This document shows positions 1 to 64,000 of a stretch of 64,000 bases of DNA, one piece after another. Origin of the DNA: Schmidtea nova (lineage: Eukaryota). How positions within the stretch are numbered: the stretch's first letter is position 1; every line of letters begins with the position of its first letter. A program made the position numbers and the translations under genes. The notes beneath the pieces are model-generated. The model did not search any database. It had not been told where the DNA came from and worked only from the letters and a program-made list of their open reading frames with translations. The stretch is from contig CM097882.1 of the NCBI GenBank assembly GCA_044892505.1, forward strand, positions 312,418,001 through 312,482,000, in the 5' to 3' direction.

Positions 1-2
1 AA

Positions 3-1898
3 ATAATTATTAAAAATAATAAAAAATCTGTTAAAATTATAGAACCTAATAAAACAACTAAACAGAAGTATGATAAATTTGAATTTAAAAATCTGGTTCG
101 TATTTTAACGAAAAGGGAACGCCAGAAAATCTTGAATGCCTTCCCTGCTTTAATACAACTAATTAAAAAGAAAGAATCACAGAGTAAATATTTTGAAATT
201 AATAAATTTCTTTCGAGCAAAGATTTTAATGTGAATCACTTGAATTTAATTAATTTTGATTATTTTTTCTATAGAAATTGTAATCTTTGTGTATCTTTAA
301 AATTGAACAACGCTCCTGTCATTTCATCAGCACCAAAACCTGTTGTTTTAAAATCTATTAAATTAATTGACCATAATATCGTCAAAATAAATTCTGAAAT
401 CCCTGACTTTGTTCGAGCTCCAATGTCAATTCGAAGATTTTTATTCAATCTTTCGCACGATCTTTCAAACACTGTTTCCATCAAGGATGAGAAACACAGG
501 GGAAATAAAATAAATAACATTCTTACTTCAATGAAACATAAACAACAATTACCAGATTATTTAATAAAATCAAACATTAAATACGAAAATGGTGAGTTCT
601 TATTATTAGATTTGACTAACGATAAAATCAAATTGAACGACGATAATAACTTGATAAAATCAAATTTTTCTGAACTTACTAGAAGTCAGATTAAAAATCT
701 TTACTATTCTTATCCTTCTCTTAAGGAAGTTTGTTTCGTTGAAAATCTTGAAACAAGATCATCATCCGTTAGTAAAATTATCGAATCTTTAAAGTTAATT
801 AATGAATTTCCAAAAAATATCATTTTTAAAGAGGGTAAATTTTATCAGTCTGATAAAAGAACAATCTCACCTAGTAGTTCTCCTGACATAATGTTCAACC
901 TAGGTCTTTTTAATTTGGCTAGTATGAGTAGAAAAGATTGTGAATTAAAATCCATTTTAGAGAAGACTGGTTGTGACTTTAAAATAGTTGAAATAATATT
1001 CTACCTCAACTATTTAGGCTTGACTCAATCTTTAGAATTTTGCAAAAATCAAACTTATTCCGATTATGTGAGGAATTACGTCTGTAATTGCTGCTTGATA
1101 AACTCACTCTGTAGTATTGCTGATGTTGATTCGCTTTCATCTGAAGATTTTGAGGGTTGGGCGACCGAAATTGTTCAGAAAATCCCAGTTTCTTCCTATT
1201 ACTTCAATAGCTGCCAGGAAAAGCTTTTAAAGCTGAAGCAATGGGACATTTCAACTAAAATCAAAAGAATCCATAACGTTATTTCACCTGAAATAATATC
1301 TTATTTAAATAACTTTCTTGACTCTGTAGACGTAAAATTTCCATCTAAGTCTCAACAACATAATATTCTAATTAAATTAATGAAAGCTATCAATGACATT
1401 AAAATTTTTGATGACATACACGGAAATAAAGCAAAAAGACTTGTTTACTTTTTGCTAAGAGATGCCAAGAAATATTTGAATAAAAATCAACGATTCAGAT
1501 TATTTGAATCGAGCAATAAATATTGCACTTCAGAGATGGAGAATATAATTTCAGTAATAATTGAGAACCTTACCAAAGTTACTGACCATGAAGTTACTAC
1601 TCCTGAAATCACAGTTGAAGAAACGCCAATTGAAATAACTTGTGATCCTGAACCTATCGTCTTGATTAAGGAAATAAACTGTTTAAAATGTAACAATATC
1701 ATCGAAAAATGCATTCTTGTTAGAGATGGAACAAACGTCAACATCTGTGAAAGCTGTCTATTTGACGCAATTACCTTTGAAAAGCCGATTCCTGAAGCTA
1801 CTAATTCGGATATCGAAGAAAATATAGAAACAAATTGTAAGAAATCTTGTCCAAGACCTAGAAAAACAGACAAGAAAACATCAACCAAAGCAAAATGA
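3..1898 (+). CDS. ORF1 of copy 1, 5'-partial (open from the window edge; the track's start at 132 is an internal TTG)
   Basis: Collinear with ORF1 of copy 2 at offset 8781; ends at TGA 1896-1898. Confidence 0.9.
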   Translation: MIIKNNKKSVKIIEPNKTTKQKYDKFEFKNLVRILTKRERQKILNAFPALIQLIKKKESQSKYFEINKFLSSKDFNVNHLNLINFDYFFYRNCNLCVSLKLNNAPVISSAPKPVVLKSIKLIDHNIVKINSEIPDFVRAPMSIRRFLFNLSHDLSNTVSIKDEKHRGNKINNILTSMKHKQQLPDYLIKSNIKYENGEFLLLDLTNDKIKLNDDNNLIKSNFSELTRSQIKNLYYSYPSLKEVCFVENLETRSSSVSKIIESLKLINEFPKNIIFKEGKFYQSDKRTISPSSSPDIMFNLGLFNLASMSRKDCELKSILEKTGCDFKIVEIIFYLNYLGLTQSLEFCKNQTYSDYVRNYVCNCCLINSLCSIADVDSLSSEDFEGWATEIVQKIPVSSYYFNSCQEKLLKLKQWDISTKIKRIHNVISPEIISYLNNFLDSVDVKFPSKSQQHNILIKLMKAINDIKIFDDIHGNKAKRLVYFLLRDAKKYLNKNQRFRLFESSNKYCTSEMENIISVIIENLTKVTDHEVTTPEITVEETPIEITCDPEPIVLIKEINCLKCNNIIEKCILVRDGTNVNICESCLFDAITFEKPIPEATNSDIEENIETNCKKSCPRPRKTDKKTSTKAK

Positions 1899-1964
1899 AG
1901 ATGTGTGCCTGCATCAGCTCAATCGTCTGCCATTCCCTCTAATGAGACTGATGCAGAGAGCACA
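1896..1964 (+). promoter_or_regulatory. Candidate UGA readthrough signal (stop + stem-loop), copy 1
   Basis: TGA, 5-nt spacer AGATG, then TGTGC-CTGCATCAG-CTCA (1904-1921) pairing with TGAG-a-CTGATGCAG-aga-GCACA (1943-1964). Confidence 0.65.
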
Positions 1965-4900
1965 ACTAAAAATAATATTTCAACTATCGACAATCGTGAT
2001 CCTGAAGTGTGGTTTTCTGATAATGATATTGATTGGTATCTTGAAAACCACATTGATAATCCAATGCATGGATATATTAAATGCTTTATAGTAAATATCA
2101 TCTGTTCTAACATCACAGAAGATATTGTTGAAATTCCACCATCTATTAGCAATGCTGAAATTGTATTTTGTCCACTCAACATTAACAATTCGCACTGGAT
2201 TCTTTTTGTTTATAGTAAGAAAATGTTATCTTCTTACTTTATTGACCCAATCCTTGCAAACAGACAAAAGCCAATCAATAAACAAATGGCTCAGAGAATT
2301 AACCTAAAACTGAATAGATTTTTTAATCTAAATATATCTGTGTCCCGACATCCACACAAACATCTTGAATATCAAAATAACAGCTTTGATTGTGGCCCAT
2401 TTACGTGTGCTTATGCTGTGATTATCAGTAAAGATTTGAACAGCTTTCCAAATGGGTTCATAGAGAAAATTCGTACCAGTGTGCATGAAAATCAAAATCG
2501 TATGCAAATAACCGAATCCACCTTATTCGCTGGTACTAACTCCAAGATGGACATGACCAAAATAAATATCAAGAAAGCCCTTGCAAAAAAGAAAGTCATC
2601 ACCAACACCTCAGATATGACCAAAGTATTGAACACTCAAAAACCGTGTGTGTCATCAATAATTAGTAAATATTACGAAAGTAATTCTAAAATAACAGTCT
2701 TATCTGCCGAACTAACTTTAAACCTAATTGCACAAAATACCTCCTTCATAGCTGATAATGTCACTTTCAAGCAGTTCAAAGGAATCGATCATGTTATAAG
2801 TATCATTCCTAAATTTAACGATTGGTGTCTCTTTGTCTATTCGAATAAACTTGACAGGAGCTACATGTTCGACTTCAATTATCGAAACATTGATGAAAGG
2901 CTAATTGAAATTGGTGAAAAGATAACTGAATATCTGAATCAATTCACTCTTGTTTCTAAAATAAAATTCACACCTCATCATAGAATTTCTCATCCAACAT
3001 TTCATTCTTACGATGATCAATATTTTGCAAGTTCTTTTATTGTATTTTTTGAGAAACTTGTCTTTGAAAGAATACTGGACAATGATAAGGTTTATGACTC
3101 ATTAAGTGCTCTAAAATATCAGTCTTGTAAAGATCTTTCTCCTAGCTTAAGTTTCATTAATGGTAAAATATCCGACAAAATTATTGAGGAATATTTTGCT
3201 AGCCTAAACTTATCGACCAAATATATTCTTCTAAACACAACAATGTGTACTGCGCTTTCAGATGATTGCACTGAATACTTGAAAGACTTTGTAAACATTG
3301 AGTGCATGATGAAGGCTACTATAATCTTTGTAATCATTTCTCCTCCAAGAGCCAACGACTTGCTCATGGTTATTGATTACGACGCTGATGAGCACTATTT
3401 ATTAAGCCCAGTCACTAATGACTTGTTCGTTATGACTGAAGGATTCTGCTATAAATTACTAATTAAAATTAATGAGATTAGAGAGAGCACAGGTCGTTCC
3501 TTGAAATCGCGTAATTGTCGACATGACGTTAAAGGTTCTGGCTTATTTAGTAGGTTATTAATCTGTGCCTTTATTAAATATTATGCATTTGACCGATCTC
3601 TAGAAAATATCAATCTTCATGAAATTGGCAAAATTATCTACTCACTTGTGCCATTAGTTGATAAAAATGATAATGCTGAGGAAGAAAGACGACTAAAATC
3701 AAAAGCTGTAAACTCTTTAAAACTAAATTTAAAACAGCGAATAGAAAAAGCCAATAATCTTATAATTTCACTTGAACACGCCAGTATTGATGAAATCATA
3801 AGTGGCATTCTTTCAAATATTCCTCGTCTTAAAGATTTGAACACCGATCACATTCGTACACCATATTTAGGTACTAAAGTAGAAAAAGCTAGAAAATTCA
3901 AAAATTCCACTGAATTTCTGTCAAACATGAAAAAGACTGTGTATAGGATTTTGGGTAACAACACAGAATCAATTGCACCTCCTTTTCAGGAAATTATTGA
4001 CACTTTCAGTCATCCTGATACATTACCTAGAAATTGGGAAAACATCTTTAAATTCACTAAGAGTTCTAAATTTAGTCTTGAATTAAATCCAATGACACCT
4101 AAAGAAATCCTTTCAAGTCTTTGCAAAGCTGACAACACTTCTCCAGGTCTTGATAATGTTTGTTATAAAGATCTTTTGCTATTAGACCCTGAATGTAAAT
4201 TGCTAGCTTTTCTGTACAATAAAATCCTAAAATTAGACATTATTCCTACAAGTTGGAAATCATTTAAAACCATACTAATCCCTAAACCAGATAAAAATGG
4301 CCAATATCATAAAATATATTCTTGGCGACCAATTGCCTTATTATCTGTCATTTACAAAGTCTTCGCTTCAGTTTTGGCAAATCGTCTAAGCTTATGGATA
4401 AGAAATAATTCCATGTTACACATTGGCCAAAAGGGTGGTTCGGAGTACGAAGGATGTATTGAACACAACTCTATTCTTTCTGCTATCGTCGAACATTCAA
4501 AATACAGCAAGTCTTCACCTTTAACAATAGCTTGGCTAGACATCAAAGATGCCTTCGGAAGTGTTCCACATGACTACATGTGGACACTGTTAAAACACAT
4601 AAATGTTAGTGATAGGTTTGTAGGAATTTTAAAACTGCTCTATACTGATACAAGCTCGTTTTATTGTTGCAATAAAATGCAGACACCGGATATTCCAATA
4701 AAGAAAGGAGTTAAACAAGGTTGTCCGATCTCAATGATATTGTTTGCAATAGCTATTAACCCAGTACTTGAGTCTATTAATCTATCAAACGTTAATCCTT
4801 TTACGATTGGAACATCTCCGGTACAGGTGTTGGCTTATGCGGATGATATCGCACTTATCGCGACAAATACCTCTGATCTGCAAATACTCATAAACGTTGC

Positions 4901-6515
4901 TGTAAACACCGCTAAAACAATTGGATTTGAATATCGTCCAGAAAAGTGCGCTTATATGCAATACCCTAAAATAGAAACTGTAAGCGAGATTTCTGTCAAC
5001 AACGTTCTTATAAAAAAGATTGCAACAAATGAATTTTACCAATACTTGGGAGTACCAATAGGTGACAATAATGACCAAAGTCCCTATGAAATTCTAAGCA
5101 AAGTAATTGAAGACACAAAGAAAATAGCAAATTCTGATCTTTACGGCTGGCAAAAACTTAAAGCGTATAAGGTCTTTCTGCATTCTCGCTTGATTTTTCC
5201 ATTTAGAACTAGGGAAATCAAAACAAGTTCTTTAGCTGATTCGAGTAAAAATTCAAAATTAAATGTAAATAATACGAGTATTTTGAGGAGTCATCTTAGA
5301 AAAATATTGCACTTGCCACACTACTCTGAGATTAGCTATTTTTATAATTCTACTGAAAACGGCGGTGCAGGCTGCATAGACTTACTTGACGAGTATCATA
5401 CACAGACAATCGTGTACTTTTTCCGCTTGTTAACATCAACGTGCGAATATTCGAAAAAGATAAATACTGACTCGCTTTTATTTGTCACAAGTCCGAGACT
5501 CGGAATCAAAAATCCAGTTCTTAAACAAAGTTTAGAATGGATAAATGGAAAAGACAGCAAGAAAAACAACAGTGGTTGCAAAACTCGATTTTATCGGTTG
5601 CGATCATCCATTGCTTACTTTTCTAAAGTTCACAACATTAAATTGTTATTTGAAACAGTGAAAGGGAATCCTTCTATCCGGATAACCACTACACTTAAGG
5701 GAACACGTATATTATTACCAACATTAAGAAAAGCCTTGTCAATGATTTTACATTCAGCTCTCCAGGATTCGTATCTCGAGAAATGGGAGAATAGCAATCA
5801 TAATAATCTGCTTGTATCTGCGATTAAACTCTGTCCACTTGTCAACAAGCTTATTTTCCGCAGTGATTTGACAGAATTTGAATGGAGATTCGTCCATCGA
5901 GCAAGAACGAATACATTATCAATATTTGCGAAGCCATATAAAACTGGCGAAAATCGTCTTTGTCGTAGATGTAAGCTTGAAGACGAGACTTTATCACACG
6001 TTCTTCAAACTTGTAAAATGAACAAATCTTTGGCAACTAGTCGACATAACGCTTGCTTAGAAAAAATAAAAAGCGAGTTGAAAGATCCAAACTTGTTAGT
6101 TGTTGCGGATCATAAATGTTCCCTAGTACCGACATCAACTGAACGCGTTGATTTAATAATAACCAATAATGATAAAAAGACCATATTATTGGTAGACATG
6201 AAATGCCCAATCGATTCGGTGCCCAACTTTGACTTGGCTGATAAAAAAAACATAGAAAAGTATGATAAACTAAAATCGGAAATTAAAATAGCCAAACCCG
6301 ATTATAAAGTTGAGTTGTTTACCTGCATCATAGGCTCATTAGGATCCATTGAAATTAAAACACCTGATCTTTTAGTAAAAATGGGCGTAAAAGAAAATAA
6401 AGTAAAACGTCTGATGAAAGAGTGTGCAATTAGCAATATTGCGCACTCGGCCAAAATTTGGTACTTTCATACCAATGGCTTTCTTCCAGATAATATAAGA
6501 CAAACTTTTAAATAA
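1905..6515 (+). CDS. ORF2: Ulp1-like protease(s) + reverse transcriptase + CCHC + restriction-like endonuclease, copy 1 (track start is GTG; in frame with ORF1)
   Basis: SHW(H97)..FID(D114)..QNNSFDCG(Q157,C163); WRPIALL, LDIKDAFGSVPH, GVKQGCP, YADD(978-981), YQYLG; CRRC-x8-H-x4-C(1353-1370), RHN, RVD..DMK. Confidence 0.95.
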   Translation: MPASAQSSAIPSNETDAESTTKNNISTIDNRDPEVWFSDNDIDWYLENHIDNPMHGYIKCFIVNIICSNITEDIVEIPPSISNAEIVFCPLNINNSHWILFVYSKKMLSSYFIDPILANRQKPINKQMAQRINLKLNRFFNLNISVSRHPHKHLEYQNNSFDCGPFTCAYAVIISKDLNSFPNGFIEKIRTSVHENQNRMQITESTLFAGTNSKMDMTKINIKKALAKKKVITNTSDMTKVLNTQKPCVSSIISKYYESNSKITVLSAELTLNLIAQNTSFIADNVTFKQFKGIDHVISIIPKFNDWCLFVYSNKLDRSYMFDFNYRNIDERLIEIGEKITEYLNQFTLVSKIKFTPHHRISHPTFHSYDDQYFASSFIVFFEKLVFERILDNDKVYDSLSALKYQSCKDLSPSLSFINGKISDKIIEEYFASLNLSTKYILLNTTMCTALSDDCTEYLKDFVNIECMMKATIIFVIISPPRANDLLMVIDYDADEHYLLSPVTNDLFVMTEGFCYKLLIKINEIRESTGRSLKSRNCRHDVKGSGLFSRLLICAFIKYYAFDRSLENINLHEIGKIIYSLVPLVDKNDNAEEERRLKSKAVNSLKLNLKQRIEKANNLIISLEHASIDEIISGILSNIPRLKDLNTDHIRTPYLGTKVEKARKFKNSTEFLSNMKKTVYRILGNNTESIAPPFQEIIDTFSHPDTLPRNWENIFKFTKSSKFSLELNPMTPKEILSSLCKADNTSPGLDNVCYKDLLLLDPECKLLAFLYNKILKLDIIPTSWKSFKTILIPKPDKNGQYHKIYSWRPIALLSVIYKVFASVLANRLSLWIRNNSMLHIGQKGGSEYEGCIEHNSILSAIVEHSKYSKSSPLTIAWLDIKDAFGSVPHDYMWTLLKHINVSDRFVGILKLLYTDTSSFYCCNKMQTPDIPIKKGVKQGCPISMILFAIAINPVLESINLSNVNPFTIGTSPVQVLAYADDIALIATNTSDLQILINVAVNTAKTIGFEYRPEKCAYMQYPKIETVSEISVNNVLIKKIATNEFYQYLGVPIGDNNDQSPYEILSKVIEDTKKIANSDLYGWQKLKAYKVFLHSRLIFPFRTREIKTSSLADSSKNSKLNVNNTSILRSHLRKILHLPHYSEISYFYNSTENGGAGCIDLLDEYHTQTIVYFFRLLTSTCEYSKKINTDSLLFVTSPRLGIKNPVLKQSLEWINGKDSKKNNSGCKTRFYRLRSSIAYFSKVHNIKLLFETVKGNPSIRITTTLKGTRILLPTLRKALSMILHSALQDSYLEKWENSNHNNLLVSAIKLCPLVNKLIFRSDLTEFEWRFVHRARTNTLSIFAKPYKTGENRLCRRCKLEDETLSHVLQTCKMNKSLATSRHNACLEKIKSELKDPNLLVVADHKCSLVPTSTERVDLIITNNDKKTILLVDMKCPIDSVPNFDLADKKNIEKYDKLKSEIKIAKPDYKVELFTCIIGSLGSIEIKTPDLLVKMGVKENKVKRLMKECAISNIAHSAKIWYFHTNGFLPDNIRQTFK

Positions 6516-6870
6516 ATAATTATATATATATATAAATATTTGCTTTTTAAACTCTGTAAATAAAAATTAAAGTAAATATTTTGTAAAGTAATTTTTGTAT
6601 TAAATATCCAATCTTTTTAATCTGATAAATTGTCTTTGAGAGTTATTAAATTGGGAGACCAAGTATTCTGCAACGTATGTCACTTATTCTAGACTTATCA
6701 ACTTCAAAAGAATACAGTCGCAAAGCTGGATGACGAAATCCAAAGAACCAGAAACTTCCATTCAGATTGAACAATTATATTTTGACTGTGATTGTTTAGG
6801 GACTAATCCATGTTGATTAGATAATCTGTAAAAAAAATATGTCAAACTTGTTATATTTAATAAATGTTTA
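6516..6870 (+). other. 355-nt 3' UTR of the element (same in all copies; 352 nt in copy 5), AATAAA at 6859-6864, no poly(A) tail
   Basis: Lies between the ORF2 TAA and the tRNA junction; repeated at each copy. Confidence 0.9.
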
Positions 6871-6925
6871 TTATCACGTCTGCCTAACACGCAGAAGGTC
6901 CCCGGTTCGATCCCGGGTCGAACCA
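6871..6925 (+). pseudogene. 5'-truncated tRNA-Val(AAC), nt 19-73, disrupted by element copy 1
   Basis: TTATCACG...TCGAACCA directly after the element end; nt 1-18 absent. Confidence 0.95.
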
Positions 6926-7105
6926 AATTTTTCTCAATTCATTATTTGACTTTTATTATATTTGCAACTCTTTTTTTAATTCATAACGCAATTTTGTTGT
7001 TGAATTCTCTACTTTGTACATAAATTTTATTCAAGTGAATTCAGTACATTTTGTCAAGGTAATTCGAAAATCAAACATGCACAACAATTGTTAGTTGAAA
7101 CTGTC

Positions 7106-7178
7106 GGTTCGATGGTGTAGCGGTTATCACGTCTGCCTAACACGCAGAAGGTCCCCGGTTCGATCCCGGGTCGAACCA
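7106..7178 (+). tRNA. trnV: tRNA-Val(AAC)
   Basis: Acceptor GGTTCGA/TCGAACC, anticodon arm TCTGC-CTAACAC-GCAGA, T arm CCCGG-TTCGATC-CCGGG, A73; A34 (inosine-type) anticodon indicates a eukaryote. Confidence 0.97.
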
Positions 7179-7180
7179 AA

Positions 7181-7185
7181 TTTTT
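7181..7185 (+). terminator. Pol III terminator T5, 2 nt after the discriminator base (present after every tRNA unit; a T7 tract follows ~45 nt later)
   Basis: GAACCA-AA-TTTTT; CTCTTTTTTTAA further downstream. Confidence 0.8.
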
Positions 7186-7358
7186 CTCAATTCATTATTT
7201 GACTTTTATTATATTTGCAACTCTTTTTTTAATTCATAACGCAATTTTGTTGGTGAATTCTCTACTTTGTACATAAATTTTATTCAAGTGAATTCAGTAC
7301 ATTTTGTCAAGGTAATTCGAAAATCAAACATGCACAACAATTGTTAGTTGAAACTGTC

Positions 7359-7431
7359 GGTTCGATGGTGTAGCGGTTATCACGTCTGCCTAACACGCAG
7401 AAGGTCCCCGGTTCGATCCCGGGTCGAACCA
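7359..7431 (+). tRNA. trnV: tRNA-Val(AAC)
   Basis: Identical to 7106-7178. Confidence 0.97.
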
Positions 7432-7611
7432 AATTTTTCTCAATTCATTATTTGACTTTTATTATATTTGCAACTCTTTTTTTAATTCATAACGCAATTT
7501 TGTTGTTGAATTCTCTACTTTGTACATAAATTTTATTCAAGTGAATTCAGTACATTTTGTCAAGGTAATTCGAAAATCAAACATGCACAACAATTGTTAG
7601 TTGAAACTGTC

Positions 7612-7684
7612 GGTTCGATGGTGTAGCGGTTATCACGTCTGCCTAACACGCAGAAGGTCCCCGGTTCGATCCCGGGTCGAACCA
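7612..7684 (+). tRNA. trnV: tRNA-Val(AAC)
   Basis: Identical to 7106-7178. Confidence 0.97.
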
Positions 7685-7864
7685 AATTTTTCTCAATTCA
7701 TTATTTGACTTTTATTATATTTGCAACTCTTTTTTTAATTCATAACGCAATTTTGTTGTTGAATTCTCTACTTTGTACATAAATTTTATTCAAGTGAATT
7801 CAGTACATTTTGTCAAGGTAATTCGAAAATCAAACATGCACAACAATTGTTAGTTGAAACTGTC

Positions 7865-7937
7865 GGTTCGATGGTGTAGCGGTTATCACGTCTGCCTAAC
7901 ACGCAGAAGGTCCCCGGTTCGATCCCGGGTCGAACCA
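7865..7937 (+). tRNA. trnV: tRNA-Val(AAC)
   Basis: Identical to 7106-7178. Confidence 0.97.
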
Positions 7938-8045
7938 AATTTTTCTCAATTCATTATTTGACTTTTATTATATTTGCAACTCTTTTTTTAAGTGTTGATA
8001 TATATATTGTAAATTTTAACGATTGATAAATTCTTTCAAGGTTCG

Positions 8046-16465: not shown

Positions 16466-16573
16466 AATTTTTCTCAATTCATTATTTGACTTTTATTATA
16501 TTTGCAACTCTTTTTTTAAGTGTTGATATATATATTGTAAATTTTAACGATTGATAAATTCTTTCAAGGTTCG

Positions 16574-55530: not shown

Positions 55531-58500
55531 ACTAAAAATAATATTTCAACTATCGACAATCGTGATCCTGAAGTGTGGTTTTCTGATAATGATATTGATT
55601 GGTATCTTGAAAACCACATTGATAATCCAATGCATGGATATATTAAATGCTTTATAGTAAATATCATCTGTTCTAACATCACAGAAGATATTGTTGAAAT
55701 TCCACCATCTATTAGCAATGCTGAAATTGTATTTTGTCCACTCAACATTAACAATTCGCACTGGATTCTTTTTGTTTATAGTAAGAAAATGTTATCTTCT
55801 TACTTTATTGACCCAATCCTTGCAAACAGACAAAAGCCAATCAATAAACAAATGGCTCAGAGAATTAACCTAAAACTGAATAGATTTTTTAATCTAAATA
55901 TATCTGTGTCCCGACATCCACACAAACATCTTGAATATCAAAATAACAGCTTTGATTGTGGCCCATTTACGTGTGCTTATGCTGTGATTATCAGTAAAGA
56001 TTTGAACAGCTTTCCAAATGGGTTCATAGAGAAAATTCGTACCAGTGTGCATGAAAATCAAAATCGTATGCAAATAACCGAATCCACCTTATTCGCTGGT
56101 ACTAACTCCAAGATGGACATGACCAAAATAAATATCAAGAAAGCCCTTGCAAAAAAGAAAGTCATCACCAACACCTCAGATATGACCAAAGTATTGAACA
56201 CTCAAAAACCGTGTGTGTCATCAATAATTAGTAAATATTACGAAAGTAATTCTAAAATAACAGTCTTATCTGCCGAACTAACTTTAAACCTAATTGCACA
56301 AAATACCTCCTTCATAGCTGATAATGTCACTTTCAAGCAGTTCAAAGGAATCGATCATGTTATAAGTATCATTCCTAAATTTAACGATTGGTGTCTCTTT
56401 GTCTATTCGAATAAACTTGACAGGAGCTACATGTTCGACTTCAATTATCGAAACATTGATGAAAGGCTAATTGAAATTGGTGAAAAGATAACTGAATATC
56501 TGAATCAATTCACTCTTGTTTCTAAAATAAAATTCACACCTCATCATAGAATTTCTCATCCAACATTTCATTCTTACGATGATCAATATTTTGCAAGTTC
56601 TTTTATTGTATTTTTTGAGAAACTTGTCTTTGAAAGAATACTGGACAATGATAAGGTTTATGACTCATTAAGTGCTCTAAAATATCAGTCTTGTAAAGAT
56701 CTTTCTCCTAGCCTAAGTTTCATTAATGGTAAAATATCCGACAAAATTATTGAGGAATATTTTGCTAGCCTAAACTTATCGACCAAATATATTCTTCTAA
56801 ACACAACAATGTGTACTGCGCTTTCAGATGATTGCACTGAATACTTGAAAGACTTTGTAAACATTGAGTGCATGATGAAGGCTACTATAATCTTTGTAAT
56901 CATTTCTCCTCCAAGAGCCAACGACTTGCTCATGGTTATTGATTACGACGCTGATGAGCACTATTTATTAAGCCCAGTCACTAATGACTTGTTCGTTATG
57001 ACTGAAGGATTCTGCTATAAATTACTAATTAAAATTAATGAGATTAGAGAGAGCACAGGACGTTCCTTGAAATCGCGTAATTGTCGACATGACGTTAAAG
57101 GTTCTGGCTTATTTAGTAGGTTATTAATCTGTGCCTTTATTAAATATTATGCATTTGACCGATCTCTAGAAAATATCAATCTTCATGAAATTGGCAAAAT
57201 TATCTACTCACTTGTGCCATTGGTTGATAAAAATGATAATGCTGAGGAAGAAAGACGACTAAAATCAAAAGCTGTAAACTCTTTAAAACTAAATTTAAAA
57301 CAGCGAATAGAAAAAGCCAATAATCTTATAATTTCACTTGAACACGCCAGTATTGATGAAATCATAAGTGGCATTCTTTCAAATATTCCTCGTCTTAAAG
57401 ATTTGAACACCGATCACATTCGTACACCATATTTAGGTACTAAAATAGAAAAAGCTAGAAAATTCAAAAATTCCACTGAGTTTCTGTCAAACATGAAAAA
57501 GACTGTGTATAGGATTTTGGGTAACAACACAGAATCAATTGCACCTCCTTATCAGGAAATTATTGACACTTTCAGTCATCCTGATACATTACCTAGAAAT
57601 TGGGAAAACATCTTAAAATTCACTAAGAGTTCTAAATATAGTCTTGAATTAAATCCAATGACACCTAAAGAAATCCTTTCAAGTCTTTGCAAAGCTGACA
57701 ACACTTCTCCAGGTCTTGATAATGTTTGTTATAAAGATCTTTTGTTATTAGACCCTGAATGTAAATTGCTAGCTTTTCTGTACAATAAAATCCTAAAATT
57801 AGACATTATTCCTACAAGTTGGAAATCATTTAAAACCATACTAATCCCCAAACCAGATAAAAATGGCCAATATCATAAAATATATTCTTGGCGACCAATT
57901 GCCTTATTATCTGTCATTTACAAAGTCTTCGCTTCAGTTTTGGCAAATCGTCTAAGCTTATGGATAAGAAATAATTCCATGTTACACATTGGCCAAAAGG
58001 GTGGTTCGGAGTACGAAGGATGTATTGAACACAACTCTATTCTTTCTGCTATCGTCGAACATTCAAAATACAGCAAGTCTTCACCTTTAACGATAGCTTG
58101 GCTAGACATCAAAGATGCCTTCGGAAGTGTTCCACATGACTACATGTGGACACTGTTAAAACACATAAATGTTAGTGATAGGTTTGTAGGAATTTTAAAA
58201 CTGCTCTATACTGATACAAGCTCGTTTTACTGTTGCAATAAAATGCAGACACCGGATATTCCAATAAAGAAAGGAGTTAAACAAGGTTGTCCGATCTCAA
58301 TGATATTGTTTGCAATAGCTATTAACCCAGTACTTGAGTCTATTAATCTATCAAACGTTAATCCTTTTACGATTGGAACATCTCCGGTACAGGTGTTGGC
58401 TTATGCGGATGATATCGCACTTATCGCGACAAATACCTCTGATCTGCAAATACTCATAAACGTTGCTGTAAACACCGCTAAAACAATTGGATTTGAATAT

Positions 58501-60081
58501 CGTCCAGAAAAGTGCGCTTATATGCAATACCCTAAAATAGAAACTGTAAGCGAGATTTCTGTCAACAATGTTCTTATAAAAAAGATTGCAACAAATGAAT
58601 TTTACCAATACTTGGGAGTACCAATAGGTGACAATAATGACCAAAGTCCCTATGAAATTCTAAGCAAAGTAATTGAAGACACAAAGAAAATAGCAAATTC
58701 TGATCTTTACGGCTGGCAAAAACTTAAAGCGTATAAGGTCTTTCTGCATTCTCGCTTGATTTTTCCATTTAGAACTAGGGAAATCAAAACAAGTTCTTTA
58801 GCTGATTCGAGTAAAAATTCAAAATTAAATGTAAATAATACGAGTATTTTGAGGAGTCATCTTAGAAAAATATTGCACTTGCCACACTACTCTGAGATTA
58901 GCTATTTTTATAATTCTACTGAAAACGGCGGTGCAGGCTGCATAGACTTACTTGACGAGTATCATACACAGACAATCGTGTACTTTTTCCGCTTGTTAAC
59001 ATCAACGTGCGAATATTCGAAAAAGATAAATACTGACTCGCTTTTATTTGTCACAAGTCCGAGACTCGGAATCAAAAATCCAGTTCTTAAACAAAGTTTA
59101 GAATGGATAAATGGAAAAGAGAGCAAGAAAAACAACAGTGGTTGCAAAACTCGATTTTATCGGTTGCGATCATCCATTGCTTACTTTTCTAAAGTTCACA
59201 ACATTAAATTGTTATTTGAAACAGTGAAAGGGAATCCTTCTATCCGGATAACCACTACACTTAAGGGAACACGTATATTATTACCAACATTAAGAAAAGC
59301 CTTGTCAATGATTTTACATTCAGCTCTCCAGGATTCGTATCTCGAGAAATGGGAGAATAGCAATCATAATAATCTGCTTGTATCTGCGATAAAACTCTGT
59401 CCACTTGTCAACAGGCTTATTTTCCGCAGTGATTTGACAGAATTTGAATGGAGATTCGTCCATCGAGCAAGAACGAATACATTATCAATATTTGCGAAGC
59501 CATATAAAACTGGCGAAAATCGTCTTTGTCGTAGATGTAAGCTTGAAGACGAGACTTTATCACACGTTCTTCAAACTTGTAAAATGAACAAATCTTTGGC
59601 AACTAGTCGACATAACGCTTGCTTAGAAAAAATAAAAAGCGAGTTGAAAGATCCAAACTTGTTAGTTGTTGCGGATCATAAATGTTCCCTAGTACCGACA
59701 TCAACTGAACGCGTTGATTTAATAATAACCAATAATGATAAAAAGACCATATTATTGGTAGACATGAAATGCCCAATCGATTCGGTGCCCAACTTTGACT
59801 TGGCTGATAAAAAAAACATAGAAAAGTATGATAAACTAAAATCAGAAATTAAAATAGCCAAACCCGATTATAAAGTTGAGTTGTTTACCTGCATCATAGG
59901 CTCATTAGGATCCATTGAAATTAAAACACCTGATCTTTTAGTAAAAATGGGAGTAAAAGAAAATAAAGTAAAACGTCTGATGAAAGAGTGTGCAATTAGC
60001 AATATTGCGCACTCGGCCAAAATTTGGTACTTTCATACCAATGGCTTTCTTCCAGATAATATAAGACAAACTTGTAAATAA
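55471..60081 (+). CDS. ORF2 protease-RT-CCHC-RLE, copy 7
   Basis: Same motifs. Confidence 0.95.
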   Translation: MPASAQSSAIPSNETDAESTTKNNISTIDNRDPEVWFSDNDIDWYLENHIDNPMHGYIKCFIVNIICSNITEDIVEIPPSISNAEIVFCPLNINNSHWILFVYSKKMLSSYFIDPILANRQKPINKQMAQRINLKLNRFFNLNISVSRHPHKHLEYQNNSFDCGPFTCAYAVIISKDLNSFPNGFIEKIRTSVHENQNRMQITESTLFAGTNSKMDMTKINIKKALAKKKVITNTSDMTKVLNTQKPCVSSIISKYYESNSKITVLSAELTLNLIAQNTSFIADNVTFKQFKGIDHVISIIPKFNDWCLFVYSNKLDRSYMFDFNYRNIDERLIEIGEKITEYLNQFTLVSKIKFTPHHRISHPTFHSYDDQYFASSFIVFFEKLVFERILDNDKVYDSLSALKYQSCKDLSPSLSFINGKISDKIIEEYFASLNLSTKYILLNTTMCTALSDDCTEYLKDFVNIECMMKATIIFVIISPPRANDLLMVIDYDADEHYLLSPVTNDLFVMTEGFCYKLLIKINEIRESTGRSLKSRNCRHDVKGSGLFSRLLICAFIKYYAFDRSLENINLHEIGKIIYSLVPLVDKNDNAEEERRLKSKAVNSLKLNLKQRIEKANNLIISLEHASIDEIISGILSNIPRLKDLNTDHIRTPYLGTKIEKARKFKNSTEFLSNMKKTVYRILGNNTESIAPPYQEIIDTFSHPDTLPRNWENILKFTKSSKYSLELNPMTPKEILSSLCKADNTSPGLDNVCYKDLLLLDPECKLLAFLYNKILKLDIIPTSWKSFKTILIPKPDKNGQYHKIYSWRPIALLSVIYKVFASVLANRLSLWIRNNSMLHIGQKGGSEYEGCIEHNSILSAIVEHSKYSKSSPLTIAWLDIKDAFGSVPHDYMWTLLKHINVSDRFVGILKLLYTDTSSFYCCNKMQTPDIPIKKGVKQGCPISMILFAIAINPVLESINLSNVNPFTIGTSPVQVLAYADDIALIATNTSDLQILINVAVNTAKTIGFEYRPEKCAYMQYPKIETVSEISVNNVLIKKIATNEFYQYLGVPIGDNNDQSPYEILSKVIEDTKKIANSDLYGWQKLKAYKVFLHSRLIFPFRTREIKTSSLADSSKNSKLNVNNTSILRSHLRKILHLPHYSEISYFYNSTENGGAGCIDLLDEYHTQTIVYFFRLLTSTCEYSKKINTDSLLFVTSPRLGIKNPVLKQSLEWINGKESKKNNSGCKTRFYRLRSSIAYFSKVHNIKLLFETVKGNPSIRITTTLKGTRILLPTLRKALSMILHSALQDSYLEKWENSNHNNLLVSAIKLCPLVNRLIFRSDLTEFEWRFVHRARTNTLSIFAKPYKTGENRLCRRCKLEDETLSHVLQTCKMNKSLATSRHNACLEKIKSELKDPNLLVVADHKCSLVPTSTERVDLIITNNDKKTILLVDMKCPIDSVPNFDLADKKNIEKYDKLKSEIKIAKPDYKVELFTCIIGSLGSIEIKTPDLLVKMGVKENKVKRLMKECAISNIAHSAKIWYFHTNGFLPDNIRQTCK

Positions 60082-60436
60082 ATAATTATATATATATATA
60101 AATATTTGCTTTTTAAACTCTGTAAATAAAATTTAAAGTAAATATTTTGTAAAGTAATTTTTGTATTAAATATCAAATCTTTTTAATCTGATAAATTGTC
60201 TTTGAGAGTTATTAAATTGGGAGACCAAGTATTCTGCAACGTATGTCACTTATTCTAGACTTATCAACTTCAAAATAATACAGTCGCAAAGCTGGATGAC
60301 GAAATCCAAAGAACCAGAAACTTCCATTCAGATTGAACAATTATATTTTGACTGTGATTGTTTAGGCACTAATCCATGTTGATTAGATAATCTGTAAAAA
60401 AAATATGTCAAACTTGTTATATTTAATAAATGTTTA

Positions 60437-60491
60437 TTATCACGTCTGCCTAACACGCAGAAGGTCCCCGGTTCGATCCCGGGTCGAACCA
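60437..60491 (+). pseudogene. 5'-truncated tRNA-Val, nt 19-73
   Basis: Same junction. Confidence 0.95.
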
Positions 60492-60671
60492 AATTTTTCT
60501 CAATTCATTATTTGACTTTTATTATATTTGCAACTCTTTTTTTAATTCATAACGCAATTTTGTTGTTGAATTCTCTACTTTGTACATAAATTTTATTCAA
60601 GTGAATTCAGTACATTTTGTCAAGGTAATTCGAAAATCAAACATGCACAACAATTGTTAGTTGAAACTGTC

Positions 60672-60744
60672 GGTTCGATGGTGTAGCGGTTATCACGTCT
60701 GCCTAACACGCAGAAGGTCCCCGGTTCGATCCCGGGTCGAACCA
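60672..60744 (+). tRNA. trnV: tRNA-Val(AAC)
   Basis: Identical unit. Confidence 0.97.
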
Positions 60745-60924
60745 AATTTTTCTCAATTCATTATTTGACTTTTATTATATTTGCAACTCTTTTTTTAATT
60801 CATAACGCAATTTTGTTGTTGAATTCTCTACTTTGTACATAAATTTTATTCAAGTGAATTCAGTACATTTTGTCAAGGTAATTCGAAAATCAAACATGCA
60901 CAACAATTGTTAGTTGAAACTGTC

Positions 60925-60997
60925 GGTTCGATGGTGTAGCGGTTATCACGTCTGCCTAACACGCAGAAGGTCCCCGGTTCGATCCCGGGTCGAACCA
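60925..60997 (+). tRNA. trnV: tRNA-Val(AAC)
   Basis: Identical unit. Confidence 0.97.
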
Positions 60998-61177
60998 AAT
61001 TTTTCTCAATTCATTATTTGACTTTTATTATATTTGCAACTCTTTTTTTAATTCATAACGCAATTTTGTTGTTGAATTCTCTAATTTGTACATAAATTTT
61101 ATTCAAGTGAATTCAGTACATTTTGTCAAGGTAATTCGAAAATCAAACATGCACAACAATTGTTAGTTGAAACTGTC

Positions 61178-61250
61178 GGTTCGATGGTGTAGCGGTTATC
61201 ACGTCTGCCTAACACGCAGAAGGTCCCCGGTTCGATCCCGGGTCGAACCA
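61178..61250 (+). tRNA. trnV: tRNA-Val(AAC)
   Basis: Identical unit. Confidence 0.97.
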
Positions 61251-61430
61251 AATTTTTCTCAATTCATTATTTGACTTTTATTATATTTGCAACTCTTTTT
61301 TTAATTCATAACGCAATTTTGTTGTTGAATTCTCTACTTTGTACATAAATTTTATTCAAGTGAATTCAGTACATTTTGTCAAGGTAATTCGAAAATCAAA
61401 CATGCACAACAATTGTTAGTTGAAACTGTC

Positions 61431-61503
61431 GGTTCGATGGTGTAGCGGTTATCACGTCTGCCTAACACGCAGAAGGTCCCCGGTTCGATCCCGGGTCGAA
61501 CCA
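61431..61503 (+). tRNA. trnV: tRNA-Val(AAC)
   Basis: Identical unit. Confidence 0.97.
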
Positions 61504-61620
61504 AATTTTTCTCAATTCATTATTTGACTTTTATTATATTTGCAACTCTTTTTTTAATTCATAACGCAATTTTGTTGTTAAATTCTCTACTTTGTACATA
61601 AATTTTATTCAAGTGAATTC

Positions 61621-64000
61621 TTTCAGGGTTCGATGACTCAATCACCTGCTGCTCAGTCAACTGCTGCTGATGTAATGACTCAGTCTATTGCAAATCAGTC
61701 AACTGTGACGAAGCAATATGAATTAGAAAACATTCTCAAATATCAAATTTCTAACTTGCAATATTTTCAATCGATTTTGGATTATTTTTCTCAACTAAAT
61801 GGTGGAAATCTCGCTACTGCCTCAGTTCTATCTGATGCGAATGCAAGTCAACGGAGTTCTTTCGATCAAGGATCTAAAATTTCTCAAAACCAATCTGATA
61901 ATATGCCACTTTCTTATGCTGATATTGAGACAAAATTCACTAAATCAAAGGATTTACTGATTGTCAAGCGCCTGGATTCATTGGAGTCTCAATTTATGAA
62001 TATGGCTGAAAAGTTAGATTATTTGGTTTCTTTTTTTAATGGCTCTGTTGATGATTTATCAGATTTTCCTAAAGTAAATGAAAATAATTTAAATAATAAT
62101 CCTTTTAATAAAAATAAAGTTTTTGATATCAAAGATAAATTAATTGTAAATAATGTAGTTTTAGATAAATCAAATATTTCAGAATTTATTGAAAATAATA
62201 TTGCTAAAATTCCTAATAGTTTAATTGATGTAAATAATAAAATGTGTAATTCAAATAATAAATTTCTAAATAACCCTAATAAAGAGAATGTTAAACATTT
62301 TAATAATCCCAAAGATACATCTTCAATTGATTTGACTAACGATAAAATTATGCCAAATGAAAACATAGAAATAATTATTAAAAATAATAAAAAATCTGTT
62401 AAAATTATAGAACCTTATAAAACAACTAAAGAGAAGTATGATAAATTTGAATTTAAAAGTCTGGTTCGTATTTTAACGAAAAGGGAACGCCAGAAAATCT
62501 TGAATGCCTTCCCTGCTTTAATACAACTAATTAAAAAGAAAGAATCACAGAGTAAATATTTTGAAATTAATAAATTTCTTTCGAGCAAAGATTTTAATGT
62601 GAATCACTTGAATTTAAATAATTTTGATTATTTTTTCTATAGAAATTGTAATCTTTGTGTATCTTTAAAATTGAACAACGCTCCTGTCATTTTATCAGCA
62701 CCAAAACCTGTTGTTTTAAAAACTATTAAATTAATTGACCATAATATCGTCAAAATAAATTCTGAAATCCCTGACTTTGTTCGAGCTCCAATGTCAATTC
62801 GAAGATTTTTATTCAATCTTTCGCACGATCTTTCAAACACTGTTTCCATCAAGGATGAGAAACACAGGGGAAATAAAATAAATAACATTCTTACTTCAAT
62901 GAAACATAAACAACAATTACCAGATTATTTAATAAAATCAAACATTAAATACGAAAATGGTGAGTTCTTATTATTAGATTTGACTAACGATAAAATCAAA
63001 TTGAACGACGATAATAACTTGATAAAATCAAATTTTTCTGAACTTACTAGAAGTCAGATTAAAAATCTTTACTATTCTTATCCTTCTCTTAAGGAAGTTT
63101 GTTTCGTTGAAAATCTTGAAACAAGATCATCATCCGTTAGTAAAATTATCGAATCTTTAAAGTTAATTAATGAATTTCCAAAAAATATCATTTTTAAAGA
63201 GGGTAAATTTTATCAGTCTGATAAAAGAACAATCTCACCTAGTAGTTCTCCTGACATAATGTTCAACCTTGGTCTTTTTAATTTGGCTAGTATGAGTAGA
63301 AAAGATTGTGAATTAAAATCCATTTTAGAGAAGACTGGTTGTGACTTTAAAATAGTTGAAATAATATTCTACCTCAACTATTTAGGCTTGACTCAATCTT
63401 TAGAATTTTGCAAAAATCAAACTTATTCTGATTATGTGAGGAATTACGTCTGTAATTGCTGCTTGATAAACTCACTCTGTAGTATTGCTGATGTTGATTC
63501 GCTTTCATCTGAAGATTTTGAGGGTTGGGCGACCGAAATTGTTCAGAAAATCCCAGTTTCTTCCTATTACTTCAATAGCTGCCAGGAAAAGCTTTTAAAG
63601 CTGAAGCAATGGGACATTTCAACTAAAATCAAAAGAATCCATAACGTTATTTCACCTGAAATAATATCTTATTTAAATAACTTTCTTGACTCTGTAGACG
63701 TAAAATTTCCATCTAAGTCTCAACAACATAATATTCTAATTAAATTAATGAAAGCTATCAATGACATTAAAATTTTTGATGACATACACGGAAATAAAGC
63801 AAAAAGACTTGTTTACTTTTTGCTAAGAGATGCCAAGAAATATTTGAATAAAAATCAACGATTCAGATTATTTGAATCGAGCAATAAATATTGCACTTCA
63901 GAGATGGAGAATATAATTTCAGTAATAATTGAGAACCTTACCAAAGTTACTGACCATGAAGTTACTACTCCTGAAATCACAGTTGAAGAAACGCCAATTG
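61621..64000 (+). mobile_element. Non-LTR retrotransposon copy 8, type-B 5' junction, 3' part outside window
   Basis: GTGAATTC|TTTCAGGGTTCGATGACTCA followed by ORF1 sequence. Confidence 0.93.
61633..64000 (+). CDS. ORF1 of copy 8, 3'-partial (missing from the ORF track because it has no stop inside the window)
   Basis: ATG at 61633; collinear with copy 6 at constant offset. Confidence 0.88.
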   Translation, partial: MTQSPAAQSTAADVMTQSIANQSTVTKQYELENILKYQISNLQYFQSILDYFSQLNGGNLATASVLSDANASQRSSFDQGSKISQNQSDNMPLSYADIETKFTKSKDLLIVKRLDSLESQFMNMAEKLDYLVSFFNGSVDDLSDFPKVNENNLNNNPFNKNKVFDIKDKLIVNNVVLDKSNISEFIENNIAKIPNSLIDVNNKMCNSNNKFLNNPNKENVKHFNNPKDTSSIDLTNDKIMPNENIEIIIKNNKKSVKIIEPYKTTKEKYDKFEFKSLVRILTKRERQKILNAFPALIQLIKKKESQSKYFEINKFLSSKDFNVNHLNLNNFDYFFYRNCNLCVSLKLNNAPVILSAPKPVVLKTIKLIDHNIVKINSEIPDFVRAPMSIRRFLFNLSHDLSNTVSIKDEKHRGNKINNILTSMKHKQQLPDYLIKSNIKYENGEFLLLDLTNDKIKLNDDNNLIKSNFSELTRSQIKNLYYSYPSLKEVCFVENLETRSSSVSKIIESLKLINEFPKNIIFKEGKFYQSDKRTISPSSSPDIMFNLGLFNLASMSRKDCELKSILEKTGCDFKIVEIIFYLNYLGLTQSLEFCKNQTYSDYVRNYVCNCCLINSLCSIADVDSLSSEDFEGWATEIVQKIPVSSYYFNSCQEKLLKLKQWDISTKIKRIHNVISPEIISYLNNFLDSVDVKFPSKSQQHNILIKLMKAINDIKIFDDIHGNKAKRLVYFLLRDAKKYLNKNQRFRLFESSNKYCTSEMENIISVIIENLTKVTDHEVTTPEITVEETPI

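What the first reader, a model, noticed from the sequence alone, without database searches (positions are those of the whole stretch)
1..64000. Site-specific NeSL-type retrotransposon that has colonised a tandem tRNA-Val(AAC) array by inserting into the D-loop
Seen: all 7 visible 3' junctions (6870, 15651, 24177, 32199, 40471, 48514, 60436) read ...AATAAATGTTTA|TTATCACG, i.e. element joined to tRNA nt 19. All copies are co-oriented with the tRNA, and none lies elsewhere in the 253-bp unit. Established: the CCHC + PD-(D/E)xK-type endonuclease after RT marks the R2/R4/NeSL group of target-specific LINEs, and an Ulp1-like protease before RT is known from C. elegans NeSL-1 (SL1 target). Relatives target 28S rDNA (R2, R5) and U2 snRNA (Utopia). 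Inference: this is a tRNA-array analogue of the R2/rDNA system, active recently. Some NeSL-group families may already be reported at other tRNA genes, so the novelty of this target needs checking.
Basis: partly seen in the sequence, partly recalled or inferred. Interest (0 to 1): 0.9.

Follow-up and report, generated by a model that had tools for sequence, protein, structure and literature searches.

The report
Retrotransposon family nesting in tRNA-Val array
A 7.7-kb jumping gene of the R2/NeSL kind sits eight times in a tandem array of valine tRNA genes, always joined at its tail to the same base of the tRNA; it is a new family and target, but this way of life is already described.

Summary
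The window is a 253-bp tandem tRNA-Val(AAC) array with 34 intact genes. It is interrupted by 8 co-oriented copies of a ~7.66-kb element. All 7 visible 3' ends join tRNA nt 19 identically.

The element is a restriction-like-endonuclease (RLE) non-LTR retrotransposon:
- ORF1 is 877 aa, lineage-specific, with a C-terminal Cys4 motif.
- An in-frame UGA followed by a strong hairpin separates ORF1 from ORF2.
- ORF2 holds a Ulp1 protease, two Ulp1-like repeats, RT, CCHC and a D..DxK nuclease.

ORF2 is intact in 7/7 copies. Differences between copies are mostly synonymous (dN/dS ~0.13) and about ten times denser than in the array. This points to several insertions from active lineages, plus one block duplication.

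- The 5' junctions are not in the tRNA. There are two types, in the spacer.
- In a periodic array these read equally as 144/81-bp deletions or 109/172-bp target duplications.
- The RT falls in its own metagenome-only clade, apart from a Caenorhabditis NeSL-like protein.
- NeSL-related families specific for tRNA-Pro, -Arg and -Glu were published in 2015.

Specificity outside this array and the host could not be tested.

The parts
1..6870 (+). Copy E0, cut by the window edge at its 5' side. The visible ORF1 part is open and ORF2 (1899-6515) is intact.
6871..7991 (+). Array segment of 4.43 units. It starts with truncated tRNA nt 19-73 and ends at unit position 127.
7992..15651 (+). Copy E1, full length 7660 bp, 5' junction type A. 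Both ORFs are intact.
7992..8045 (+). 5' leader of E1. It is 54 nt, of which the first 42 nt are absent from type B copies.
8046..10679 (+). ORF1 of E1, 877 aa, ending in UGA. The N-terminal ~275 aa are predicted disordered or coiled. An ordered domain spans aa ~276-777. A Cys4 motif (10461-10544) and a basic tail close the protein.
10680..10748 (+). RNA hairpin directly after the ORF1 UGA. The core 10-bp stem starts 9 nt after the stop.
10680..15296 (+). ORF2 of E1, in the same frame as ORF1. The first start-type codon is GTG at 10686 and the first ATG is at 10845.
10845..11250 (+). Ulp1-like protease domain (repeat 1). The His (in HW), Asp (in DP), Gln and Cys (in DCGP) positions are invariant across the family.
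11428..12375 (+). Two further Ulp1-like repeats. Repeat 3 has Ser-Gly where repeat 1 has Cys-Gly.
13059..13838 (+). Reverse transcriptase domain (RVT_1), with YADD at 13617-13628.
14742..14996 (+). CCHC motif (14742-14795) and restriction-like endonuclease core: RVD at 14925 and VDMK at 14973.
15190..15272 (+). Strongly structured RNA stretch at the end of ORF2.
15297..15651 (+). 3' UTR of 355 nt. AATAAA lies 12-7 nt before the end. There is no poly(A) or repeat tail, and it folds no better than shuffles.
15652..16519 (+). Array segment, 3.43 units.
16520..24177 (+). Copy E2, 7658 bp, type A. ORF2 (19206-23822) is intact.
16574..19205 (+). ORF1 of E2, broken by one frameshift.
24178..24539 (+). 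Array segment, 1.43 units.
24540..32199 (+). Copy E3, 7660 bp, type A. Both ORFs are intact. It differs from E1 at 4 sites.
32200..32814 (+). Array segment, 2.43 units.
32815..40471 (+). Copy E4, 7657 bp, type A. Both ORFs are intact.
40472..40896 (+). Array segment, 1.68 units, ending at unit position 190.
40897..48514 (+). Copy E5, 7618 bp, type B (lacks the 42-nt leader part). Both ORFs are intact.
48515..53493 (+). Array segment, 19.68 units.
53494..60436 (+). Copy E6, 6943 bp, type B. ORF2 (55465-60081) is intact.
53506..55464 (+). ORF1 of E6. It carries one in-frame deletion of 675 nt and is still open (652 aa).
60437..61620 (+). Array segment, 4.68 units.
61621..64000 (+). Copy E7, type B, cut by the window edge. 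The visible ORF1 part is open.

Best explanation
This is a family of restriction-like-endonuclease (RLE) non-LTR retrotransposons that lives in a tandem tRNA-Val(AAC) array.

Inferred by homology with R2:
- The ORF2 nuclease nicks the bottom strand opposite tRNA nt 18|19.
- The RT then copies the element RNA from its 3' end (target-primed reverse transcription). This gives the invariant tail junction, which has no poly(A).
- The 5' end is joined less precisely, in the spacer, once with a 5-bp microhomology.

Shown:
- Several insertions came from slightly diverged lineages that were under selection.
- Array recombination then duplicated at least one ~16.5-kb block and changed the number of units between copies.

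Inferred for expression:
- ORF1 and ORF2 are made from one RNA.
- ORF2 is reached either by read-through of the in-frame UGA, helped by the hairpin 9 nt downstream (gag-pol style), or by re-initiation at the conserved start-type codon two codons after the stop.
- The Ulp1 protease would then cut the products.

The clade is unresolved. The architecture is NeSL-like, but the RT lineage is separate.
For: Junctions and array:
- 7 of 7 3' junctions are identical, against 0.01 expected by chance.
- The array has 34 tRNAs in 253-bp units.
- Two different 5' junctions share the same 3' junction, so at least two events occurred.

Protein homology:
- ORF2 matches solved R2 proteins at E=2.6e-53, in both the RT and the CCHC/nuclease stretches. 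L1 ORF2 matches only at 1e-24 and only in the RT.
- APE-bearing proteins appear only at E>=1e-22.
- The RVD..VDxKCP motif is conserved in all 11 family members.
- The Ulp1 domain is seen by Pfam at 1.2e-7 and by Foldseek (1euv) at 8e-6.

Copy state and selection:
- ORF2 is intact in 7/7 copies. ORF1 is intact in 4/6 complete copies.
- ORF2 has 36 variable sites: 24 synonymous and 12 not, with 25 at codon position 3. This gives dN/dS ~0.13 and p=4e-9.
- Copies differ by up to 0.6%, whereas array units show 5 variants in 9.5 kb.

ORF1/ORF2 boundary:
- The UGA and frame are identical in 7 copies.
- The hairpin folds at -25.4 kcal/mol with z=-2.96. It is one of the two strongest structures among 1518 windows of the element.
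- In relatives, residue changes in the two stem arms are pair-compatible. S with D occurs in 4/4, and P/L/T with G in 6/6.
- ORF1 homologues end at the same place as here.
Against: - Only one array was seen, and no copy outside it could be examined.
- The shared type A junction in copies that differ inside, together with incompatible SNP partitions, shows that recombination or conversion blurs the count of events.
- The 5' junctions are far from the nick site, which is unusual for R2-like elements.
- The codon at the conserved ORF2 start position is GTG here. No ATG follows for 53 codons.
- The hairpin covariation is read from amino acids only and amounts to one or two events on the tree.
- No DNA-binding domain of the R2 kind (zinc finger, Myb) was found.
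- The 3' UTR is not detectably structured.
Confidence: 0.8

Rival explanations
1. One or two chance insertions into the array were multiplied only by unequal crossing-over and gene conversion. The identical junctions would then be inherited, and the element would have no real preference for tRNA-Val.
For: - Four copies share the identical type A 5' junction and three share type B.
- E0~E2 (8 differences) and E1~E3 (4 differences) alternate as expected for a block duplication.
- SNP partitions are mosaic.
Against: - Copies diverge about ten times more than the array units around them.
- The differences are strongly biased to synonymous sites. DNA-level copying of a dead insert does not produce that bias.
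- Two 5' junction types share one 3' junction.
- RLE elements are typically target-specific (PMC4640811).
Confidence: 0.08
2. The constant element|tRNA-nt-19 boundary is inherited from a master copy by 3' read-through, so the RNA carries downstream array sequence. New copies then enter at breaks anywhere in the array by annealing of that tail. The real entry points would be spacer positions 127|128 and 190|191, not the D-loop.
For: The structure '...X | element | 19..X | X+1...' fits this reading exactly for X=127 and X=190. The AATAAA so close to the end implies that transcripts run into the flank.
Against: - It needs non-specific nicks from a nuclease family known for fixed sites.
- Precise 3' junctions with variable 5' junctions are the usual signature of target-primed reverse transcription at a fixed nick.
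- Published NeSL-related families also join inside tRNA genes (PMC4640811, S6 Fig).
Confidence: 0.07
3. It is a true member of the NeSL clade (with NeSL-1, R5/LIN and Utopia). It would have inherited the Ulp1 protease and merely switched target, as NeSL-1_TV and LIN15_SM did.
For: - The order Ulp1-RT-CCHC-RLE is shared with a Caenorhabditis nigoni 2201-aa protein.
- The Ulp1 domain is reported only for nematode NeSL and Utopia-1_TSP (PMC4640811).
- tRNA targets occur in NeSL-related families.
Against: - In the NJ tree of the RT, the window's 18-member clade (85%) is separate from the 56-member group (82%) that holds the C. nigoni protein.
- It has two ORFs with an in-frame stop instead of one ORF.
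- ORF1 is unrelated to the C. nigoni N-terminus.
- No Repbase reference sequences could be included.
Confidence: 0.3

Closest known systems
NeSL-1 of Caenorhabditis (represented here by C. nigoni protein P0067)
   Same: RLE-type LINE with a Ulp1-like protease upstream of RT, CCHC and nuclease. It targets a multicopy small-RNA gene in tandem repeats. ORF2 aligns at 26% identity over 935 aa.
   Different: - The target is the spliced-leader gene, not a tRNA.
- It has one long ORF rather than ORF1-UGA-ORF2.
- It has one protease domain rather than three Ulp1-like repeats.
- The N-terminal part is unrelated.
- The RT lies in a separate clade.
NeSL-1_TV (Trichomonas, tRNA-Pro), LIN15_SM (planarian, tRNA-Arg) and LIN25_SM (tRNA-Glu), from Kojima and Jurka 2015, PMC4640811
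   Same: NeSL-related RLE LINEs whose copies join inside tRNA genes. LIN15_SM joins near the D-arm (S6 Fig).
   Different: - They target other tRNA species.
- They are shorter (NeSL in trichomonads averages ~4.4 kb, PMC12289875).
- No sequence comparison was possible, because Repbase is not on hand.
R2 (28S rDNA)
   Same: The RT and CCHC/RLE are homologous (9nl2, E=2.6e-53). It also has a precise 3' junction without poly(A), variable 5' junctions, and resides in a tandem multicopy RNA gene array that recombination reshuffles.
   Different: - No zinc finger or Myb domain was found at the N-terminus.
- No ribozyme hit was found at the 5' end.
- It has two ORFs and a protease.
- The target gene is transcribed by Pol III and ends in a T5 terminator, so co-transcription with the host gene is unlikely.
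R9 of bdelloid rotifers (from my own knowledge: a 28S-specific element with a 126-bp target duplication)
   Same: If the 5' junctions are read as duplications (109 or 172 bp), the long stagger between the two nicks would resemble R9.
   Different: Here the reading is ambiguous because of array periodicity, and two different lengths occur.
Dada-tV DNA transposons (PMC8869645); also Dewa, a Tx1-clade APE LINE of tRNA arrays (from my own knowledge, Kojima and Fujiwara 2004)
   Same: Mobile elements that use tRNA genes, including tRNA-Val-AAC, as a safe harbour.
   Different: Dada is a DNA transposon that inserts in the anticodon arm. Dewa carries an APE nuclease. Neither is related to this element.

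Membership tests
RLE-type non-LTR retrotransposons (R2/R4/NeSL/HERO/CRE group) | Non-LTR-type reverse transcriptase | tested here: met
   Pfam RVT_1 at 1.8e-29. R2 proteins of the PDB match at 2.6e-53.
RLE-type non-LTR retrotransposons (R2/R4/NeSL/HERO/CRE group) | CCHC motif and PD-(D/E)xK-type nuclease after the RT, with no APE domain | tested here: met
   A Cx2Cx12Hx4C motif and RVD..VDMK are conserved in 11/11 family members. The region aligns to R2 residues 933-1102. No Pfam APE hit was found.
RLE-type non-LTR retrotransposons (R2/R4/NeSL/HERO/CRE group) | Fixed target site with a precise 3' junction | tested here: inconclusive
   Met in 7/7 copies of this window. The rest of the genome and the relatives' flanks could not be read.
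NeSL clade | Ulp1-like cysteine protease N-terminal to the RT | tested here: met
   Peptidase_C48 at 1.2e-7. Foldseek hit to Ulp1 1euv at 8e-6. The catalytic His, Asp, Gln and Cys are invariant.
NeSL clade | RT groups with NeSL-1/R5/Utopia in a phylogeny | tested here: inconclusive
   The NJ tree separates the window clade (85%) from the group holding the C. nigoni Ulp1+RT protein (82%). No named reference elements were available.
NeSL clade | Single long ORF | tested here: not met
   Two ORFs are separated by an in-frame UGA in all 7 copies. ORF1 homologues of relatives stop at the same place.
NeSL-1 family proper | Spliced-leader (SL1) gene target | tested here: not met
   The target is tRNA-Val(AAC).
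R2 | 28S rDNA target, N-terminal zinc finger/Myb, 5' HDV-like ribozyme | tested here: not met
   The target is a tRNA. No zinc finger or Myb hit appears in Pfam. No Rfam hit lies in the element.
tRNA-specific NeSL-related families (NeSL-1_TV, LIN15_SM, LIN25_SM) | Insertion inside a tRNA gene | tested here: met
   The 3' junction is at tRNA nt 18|19.
tRNA-specific NeSL-related families (NeSL-1_TV, LIN15_SM, LIN25_SM) | Same tRNA species, or sequence relatedness to those families | not testable with these tools
   Their targets are Pro, Arg and Glu. Their sequences are in Repbase, which is not on hand.

The most novel reading that the evidence does not exclude
A deep RLE retrotransposon lineage, so far seen only in metagenomes, has two unusual traits.
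1. It makes an ORF1-ORF2 fusion by programmed UGA read-through, driven by a conserved hairpin. This would be a gag-pol strategy not established for non-LTR elements.
2. It inserts with a long staggered second cut, giving a 109-172-bp target duplication. The hit tRNA gene then stays whole upstream of the insert, so colonising the array costs the host no tRNA genes.
Probability: 0.2. Interest if true: 0.7.

Novelty: new variant of a known kind. Interest (0 to 1): 0.55.

Why it matters
Target-specific RLE retrotransposons are the models for how mobile DNA finds 'safe harbours', and they are being studied as site-specific insertion systems. This family adds several things:
- a new target, tRNA-Val in a tandem array, seen at base resolution in near-intact copies;
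- an architecture not described for NeSL or R2: a large lineage-specific ORF1, an in-frame stop with a hairpin, three Ulp1-like folds, and no zinc finger or Myb domain;
- a clade with at least 15 diverged relatives known only from metagenomes.

It also shows that in a tandem target, deletion and target duplication cannot be told apart. That matters for judging what such insertions cost the host.

The general phenomenon, an RLE LINE inside tRNA genes, is already published, so this is an extension rather than a new principle.

Tried and rejected
The contigs of the close relatives P0001-P0013 (35-61% identity) therefore could not be read.

**Searches for related DNA**
- The search for related loci on metagenome contigs gave only 24-36% relatives, with no tRNA (ARAGORN) and no Rfam hit in their flanks.
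- Viral contigs gave nothing.
- Prokaryote genome contigs gave 4 distant hits.
- The listing of cluster members gave no sample names.
- The host organism stays unknown.

**ORF1**
- The word-based protein search found nothing.
- The full HMMER scan found 18 relatives.
- There was no Pfam hit, no PDB sequence or profile hit, and no fold match.

**Ideas tested and dropped**
- The 5' leader as a diverged copy of the array spacer: local alignment is no better than shuffles, with 276 of 2000 reaching it. The 9-nt identity of 8040-8048 to tRNA nt 1-9 is within chance by the same test.
- A structured 3' UTR as in R2: z=+0.8.
- A 5' ribozyme: no Rfam hit.

**Faulty intermediate results, not used**
- The 3' UTR variable-site count was offset by indels.
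- The 'frameshift' scored for E0 is an alignment artefact at the cut end (searches show none).
- The first bootstrap suffered numeric overflow and was replaced.

**Papers not held**
- The NeSL-1 paper (PMC1460889).
- The primary paper of the 2025 inventory of site-specific elements.

Break positions are not listed.

Full report
**1. Observation**

The window has no N. ARAGORN finds 34 intact tRNA-Val(AAC) genes, all on the + strand. TRF finds a 253-bp unit at 99-100% identity. The unit is a 73-nt tRNA, then a T5 run, then a 180-nt spacer.

After each junction the array resumes at tRNA nt 19, counting linearly, which is in the D-loop inside the A-box region. Eight co-oriented copies of one element interrupt the array. 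Two are cut by the window edges.

**2. 5' junctions**

The 5' junctions are not in the tRNA.
- Type A (E1-E4): the array ends after unit position 127, which is 54 nt past a complete tRNA.
- Type B (E5-E7): the array ends after position 190. These copies lack the first 42 nt of the element, and 5 nt (AATTC) are shared between the array and the element.

Against an unbroken array this is a loss of 144 bp (type A) or 81 bp (type B). Because the target has a period of 253 bp, it is equally a duplication of 109 bp or 172 bp (positions 19-127 or 19-190). In the duplication reading the tRNA that was hit stays intact upstream, and the truncated tRNA downstream is the duplicate. The window cannot decide between the two readings.

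**3. Anatomy** (E1, 7992-15651)

| Feature | Position | Notes |
|---|---|---|
| 5' leader | 7992-8045 | 54 nt |
| ORF1 | 8046-10679 | 877 aa, ends in UGA |
| ORF2 | 10680-15296 | same frame as ORF1 |
| 3' UTR | 15297-15651 | 355 nt, AATAAA 12-7 nt from the end, no poly(A) |

ORF2 domains:
- Pfam finds Peptidase_C48 and RVT_1.
- Solved R2 proteins match at E=2.6e-53 in two stretches, the RT and the CCHC/nuclease part. L1 ORF2 matches far more weakly and only in the RT.
- The CCHC motif and the nuclease motifs (RVD, then VDxKCP) are conserved in all 11 aligned family members.
- APE-bearing proteins appear only at E>=1e-22 in the homologue list. The RT is therefore of the RLE type.

ORF2 N-terminal ~600 aa:
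- Profile comparison suggests three related segments: repeats 2 and 3 at E=3.5e-6, 1 and 2 at 8e-5, and 1 and 3 at 8.5e-4.
- The AlphaFold model (pLDDT 72) shows the same beta core three times.
- Its best structural matches are Ulp1 and SENP proteases (1euv, E=8e-6).
- Only repeat 1 keeps the invariant His, Asp, Gln and Cys. Repeat 3 has Ser-Gly at the Cys-Gly place.
- No zinc finger or Myb domain was found.

ORF1:
- It has 18 relatives in the full HMMER scan, at 17-50% identity.
- The N-terminus is predicted disordered and aa ~276-777 form an ordered domain.
- A Cys4 motif and a basic tail at the C-terminus are conserved in most relatives.
- There is no Pfam, PDB or fold match.

**4. ORF1/ORF2 boundary**

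The UGA and the shared frame are identical in all 7 copies. The predicted ORF2 proteins of ten relatives all start at the codon homologous to the window's GTG, two codons after the stop. ORF1 homologues end at the same place as here. The two-ORF layout is therefore a family trait and not a recent break.

A hairpin follows the stop directly:
- It spans 10680-10748 and folds at -25.4 kcal/mol, z=-2.96. Its 10-bp core starts 9 nt after the UGA.
- It is one of the two strongest local structures among 1518 windows of the element.
- Its arms encode P-A-S and T-D-A-E.
- Relatives with S in the first arm have D in the second (4/4). Those with P, L or T have G (6/6). At the paired bases this is U:A becoming C:G.
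- A/V changes in the neighbouring pair allow G:U wobble.

This is inferred from amino acids only and amounts to one or two events on the tree. I infer read-through of the UGA, or re-initiation at the conserved start-type codon. Which of the two occurs is open.

**5. One event or many?**

Divergence:
- Copies differ at 4-48 sites per ~7.6 kb.
- The array units show 5 variants in 9.5 kb.

Gene state:
- ORF2 is intact in 7/7 copies.
- ORF1 is intact in 4 of 6 complete copies. One copy (E2) has one frameshift, and one copy (E6) has one in-frame 675-nt deletion.
- The visible ORF1 parts of the two cut copies are open.

Selection:
- ORF2 has 36 variable sites, 24 of them synonymous and 25 at codon position 3. 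This gives dN/dS ~0.13 and p=4e-9.
- ORF1 gives 0.52, which is not significant.
- The differences therefore arose in lineages selected for a working ORF2, not by decay of one dead insert.

DNA-level events:
- E0~E2 (8 differences) and E1~E3 (4 differences) alternate, which fits duplication of a ~16.5-kb block.
- SNP partitions are mutually incompatible, so copies have recombined.

I conclude that there were several insertions (at least 2 by junction type and about 5 by sequence lineage), followed by array recombination.

**6. Relatives and clade**

- The closest proteins (35-61% identity) come only from unnamed Logan/ENA metagenome contigs of 5-8 kb.
- Named hits at ~30% identity are from nematodes and arthropods.
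- C. nigoni P0067 carries Ulp1 and RT in one 2201-aa ORF. It aligns with ORF2 over 935 aa, but not with ORF1.
- In an NJ tree of the RT with 100 bootstraps, the window groups with P0001 and P0002 at 100%. An 18-member clade around it is recovered at 85%. The other 56 RLE-type hits, including P0067, form a group at 82%.
- No Repbase references could be added, so membership in NeSL is unproven.

**7. Literature**

- Kojima and Jurka 2015 (PMC4640811) report three NeSL-related families with tRNA targets: NeSL-1_TV is tRNA-Pro-specific, LIN15_SM tRNA-Arg-specific and LIN25_SM tRNA-Glu-specific. Their S6 Fig shows junctions inside the tRNA.
- The same paper states that the Ulp1 domain is known from nematode NeSL and Utopia-1_TSP.
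- Dada-tV DNA transposons use tRNA-Val (PMC8869645).
- I found no RLE family described at tRNA-Val.

**8. Limits**

- The other collections held only distant relatives, without informative flanks.
- The host is unknown.
- The functional test lies outside what this report may propose.

**9. Verdict**

This is a real, probably recently active, target-specific RLE retrotransposon in a tRNA-Val array. It represents a new family, a new target and an unusual architecture within a known way of life.

Noticed in passing
window 15190-15272 (and the same place in the other copies): This is the most stable local RNA structure of the element (-33 kcal/mol for 15180-15300, z=-4.6, 0 of 200 shuffles). It lies in the last codons of ORF2, just before the 3' UTR. 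It might be a protein-binding site for the RT. No covariation data are available.
   Followed up: partly
window 8040-8048: The 9 nt that end in the ORF1 start codon are identical to tRNA-Val nt 1-9. By a shuffle test of the leader against the array unit, this is within chance.
   Followed up: yes
window 1-32814: The copies alternate in sequence type: E0~E2 and E1~E3. This fits a tandem duplication of a ~16.5-kb block of two elements plus array. The number of tRNA units in each gap changed later (4.4, 3.4, 1.4 and 2.4).
   Followed up: partly
window 53494-60436: Copy E6 has an in-frame 675-nt deletion in ORF1 but a fully intact ORF2. It is a natural ORF1-deletion variant sitting next to the longest uninterrupted run of tRNA genes (19.7 units).
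   Followed up: partly
window 49327, 7253, 15781, 61084, 61580: These are the only five variants in 9.5 kb of array. One is in a tRNA (nt 72, C>T). The same T>G spacer variant occurs after both E0 and E1.
   Followed up: no
proteins P0088, P0089, P0096: These metagenome RT proteins carry a ubiquitin-hydrolase (UCH, PF00443) domain instead of Ulp1. They are a second kind of deubiquitinase-like protease fused to a non-LTR RT.
   Followed up: no
window 10845-12375: ORF2 holds three Ulp1-like folds in a row, and only the first has a catalytic set. The two pseudo-protease repeats sit where R2 has its DNA-binding domains.
   Followed up: partly
L001 (Ga0066652_100015810) 171-4961: This distant soil-metagenome relative (28% identity) has one single 1596-aa ORF, with only 73 nt after the stop before the contig ends. 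It has a different layout from the window's family.
   Followed up: no
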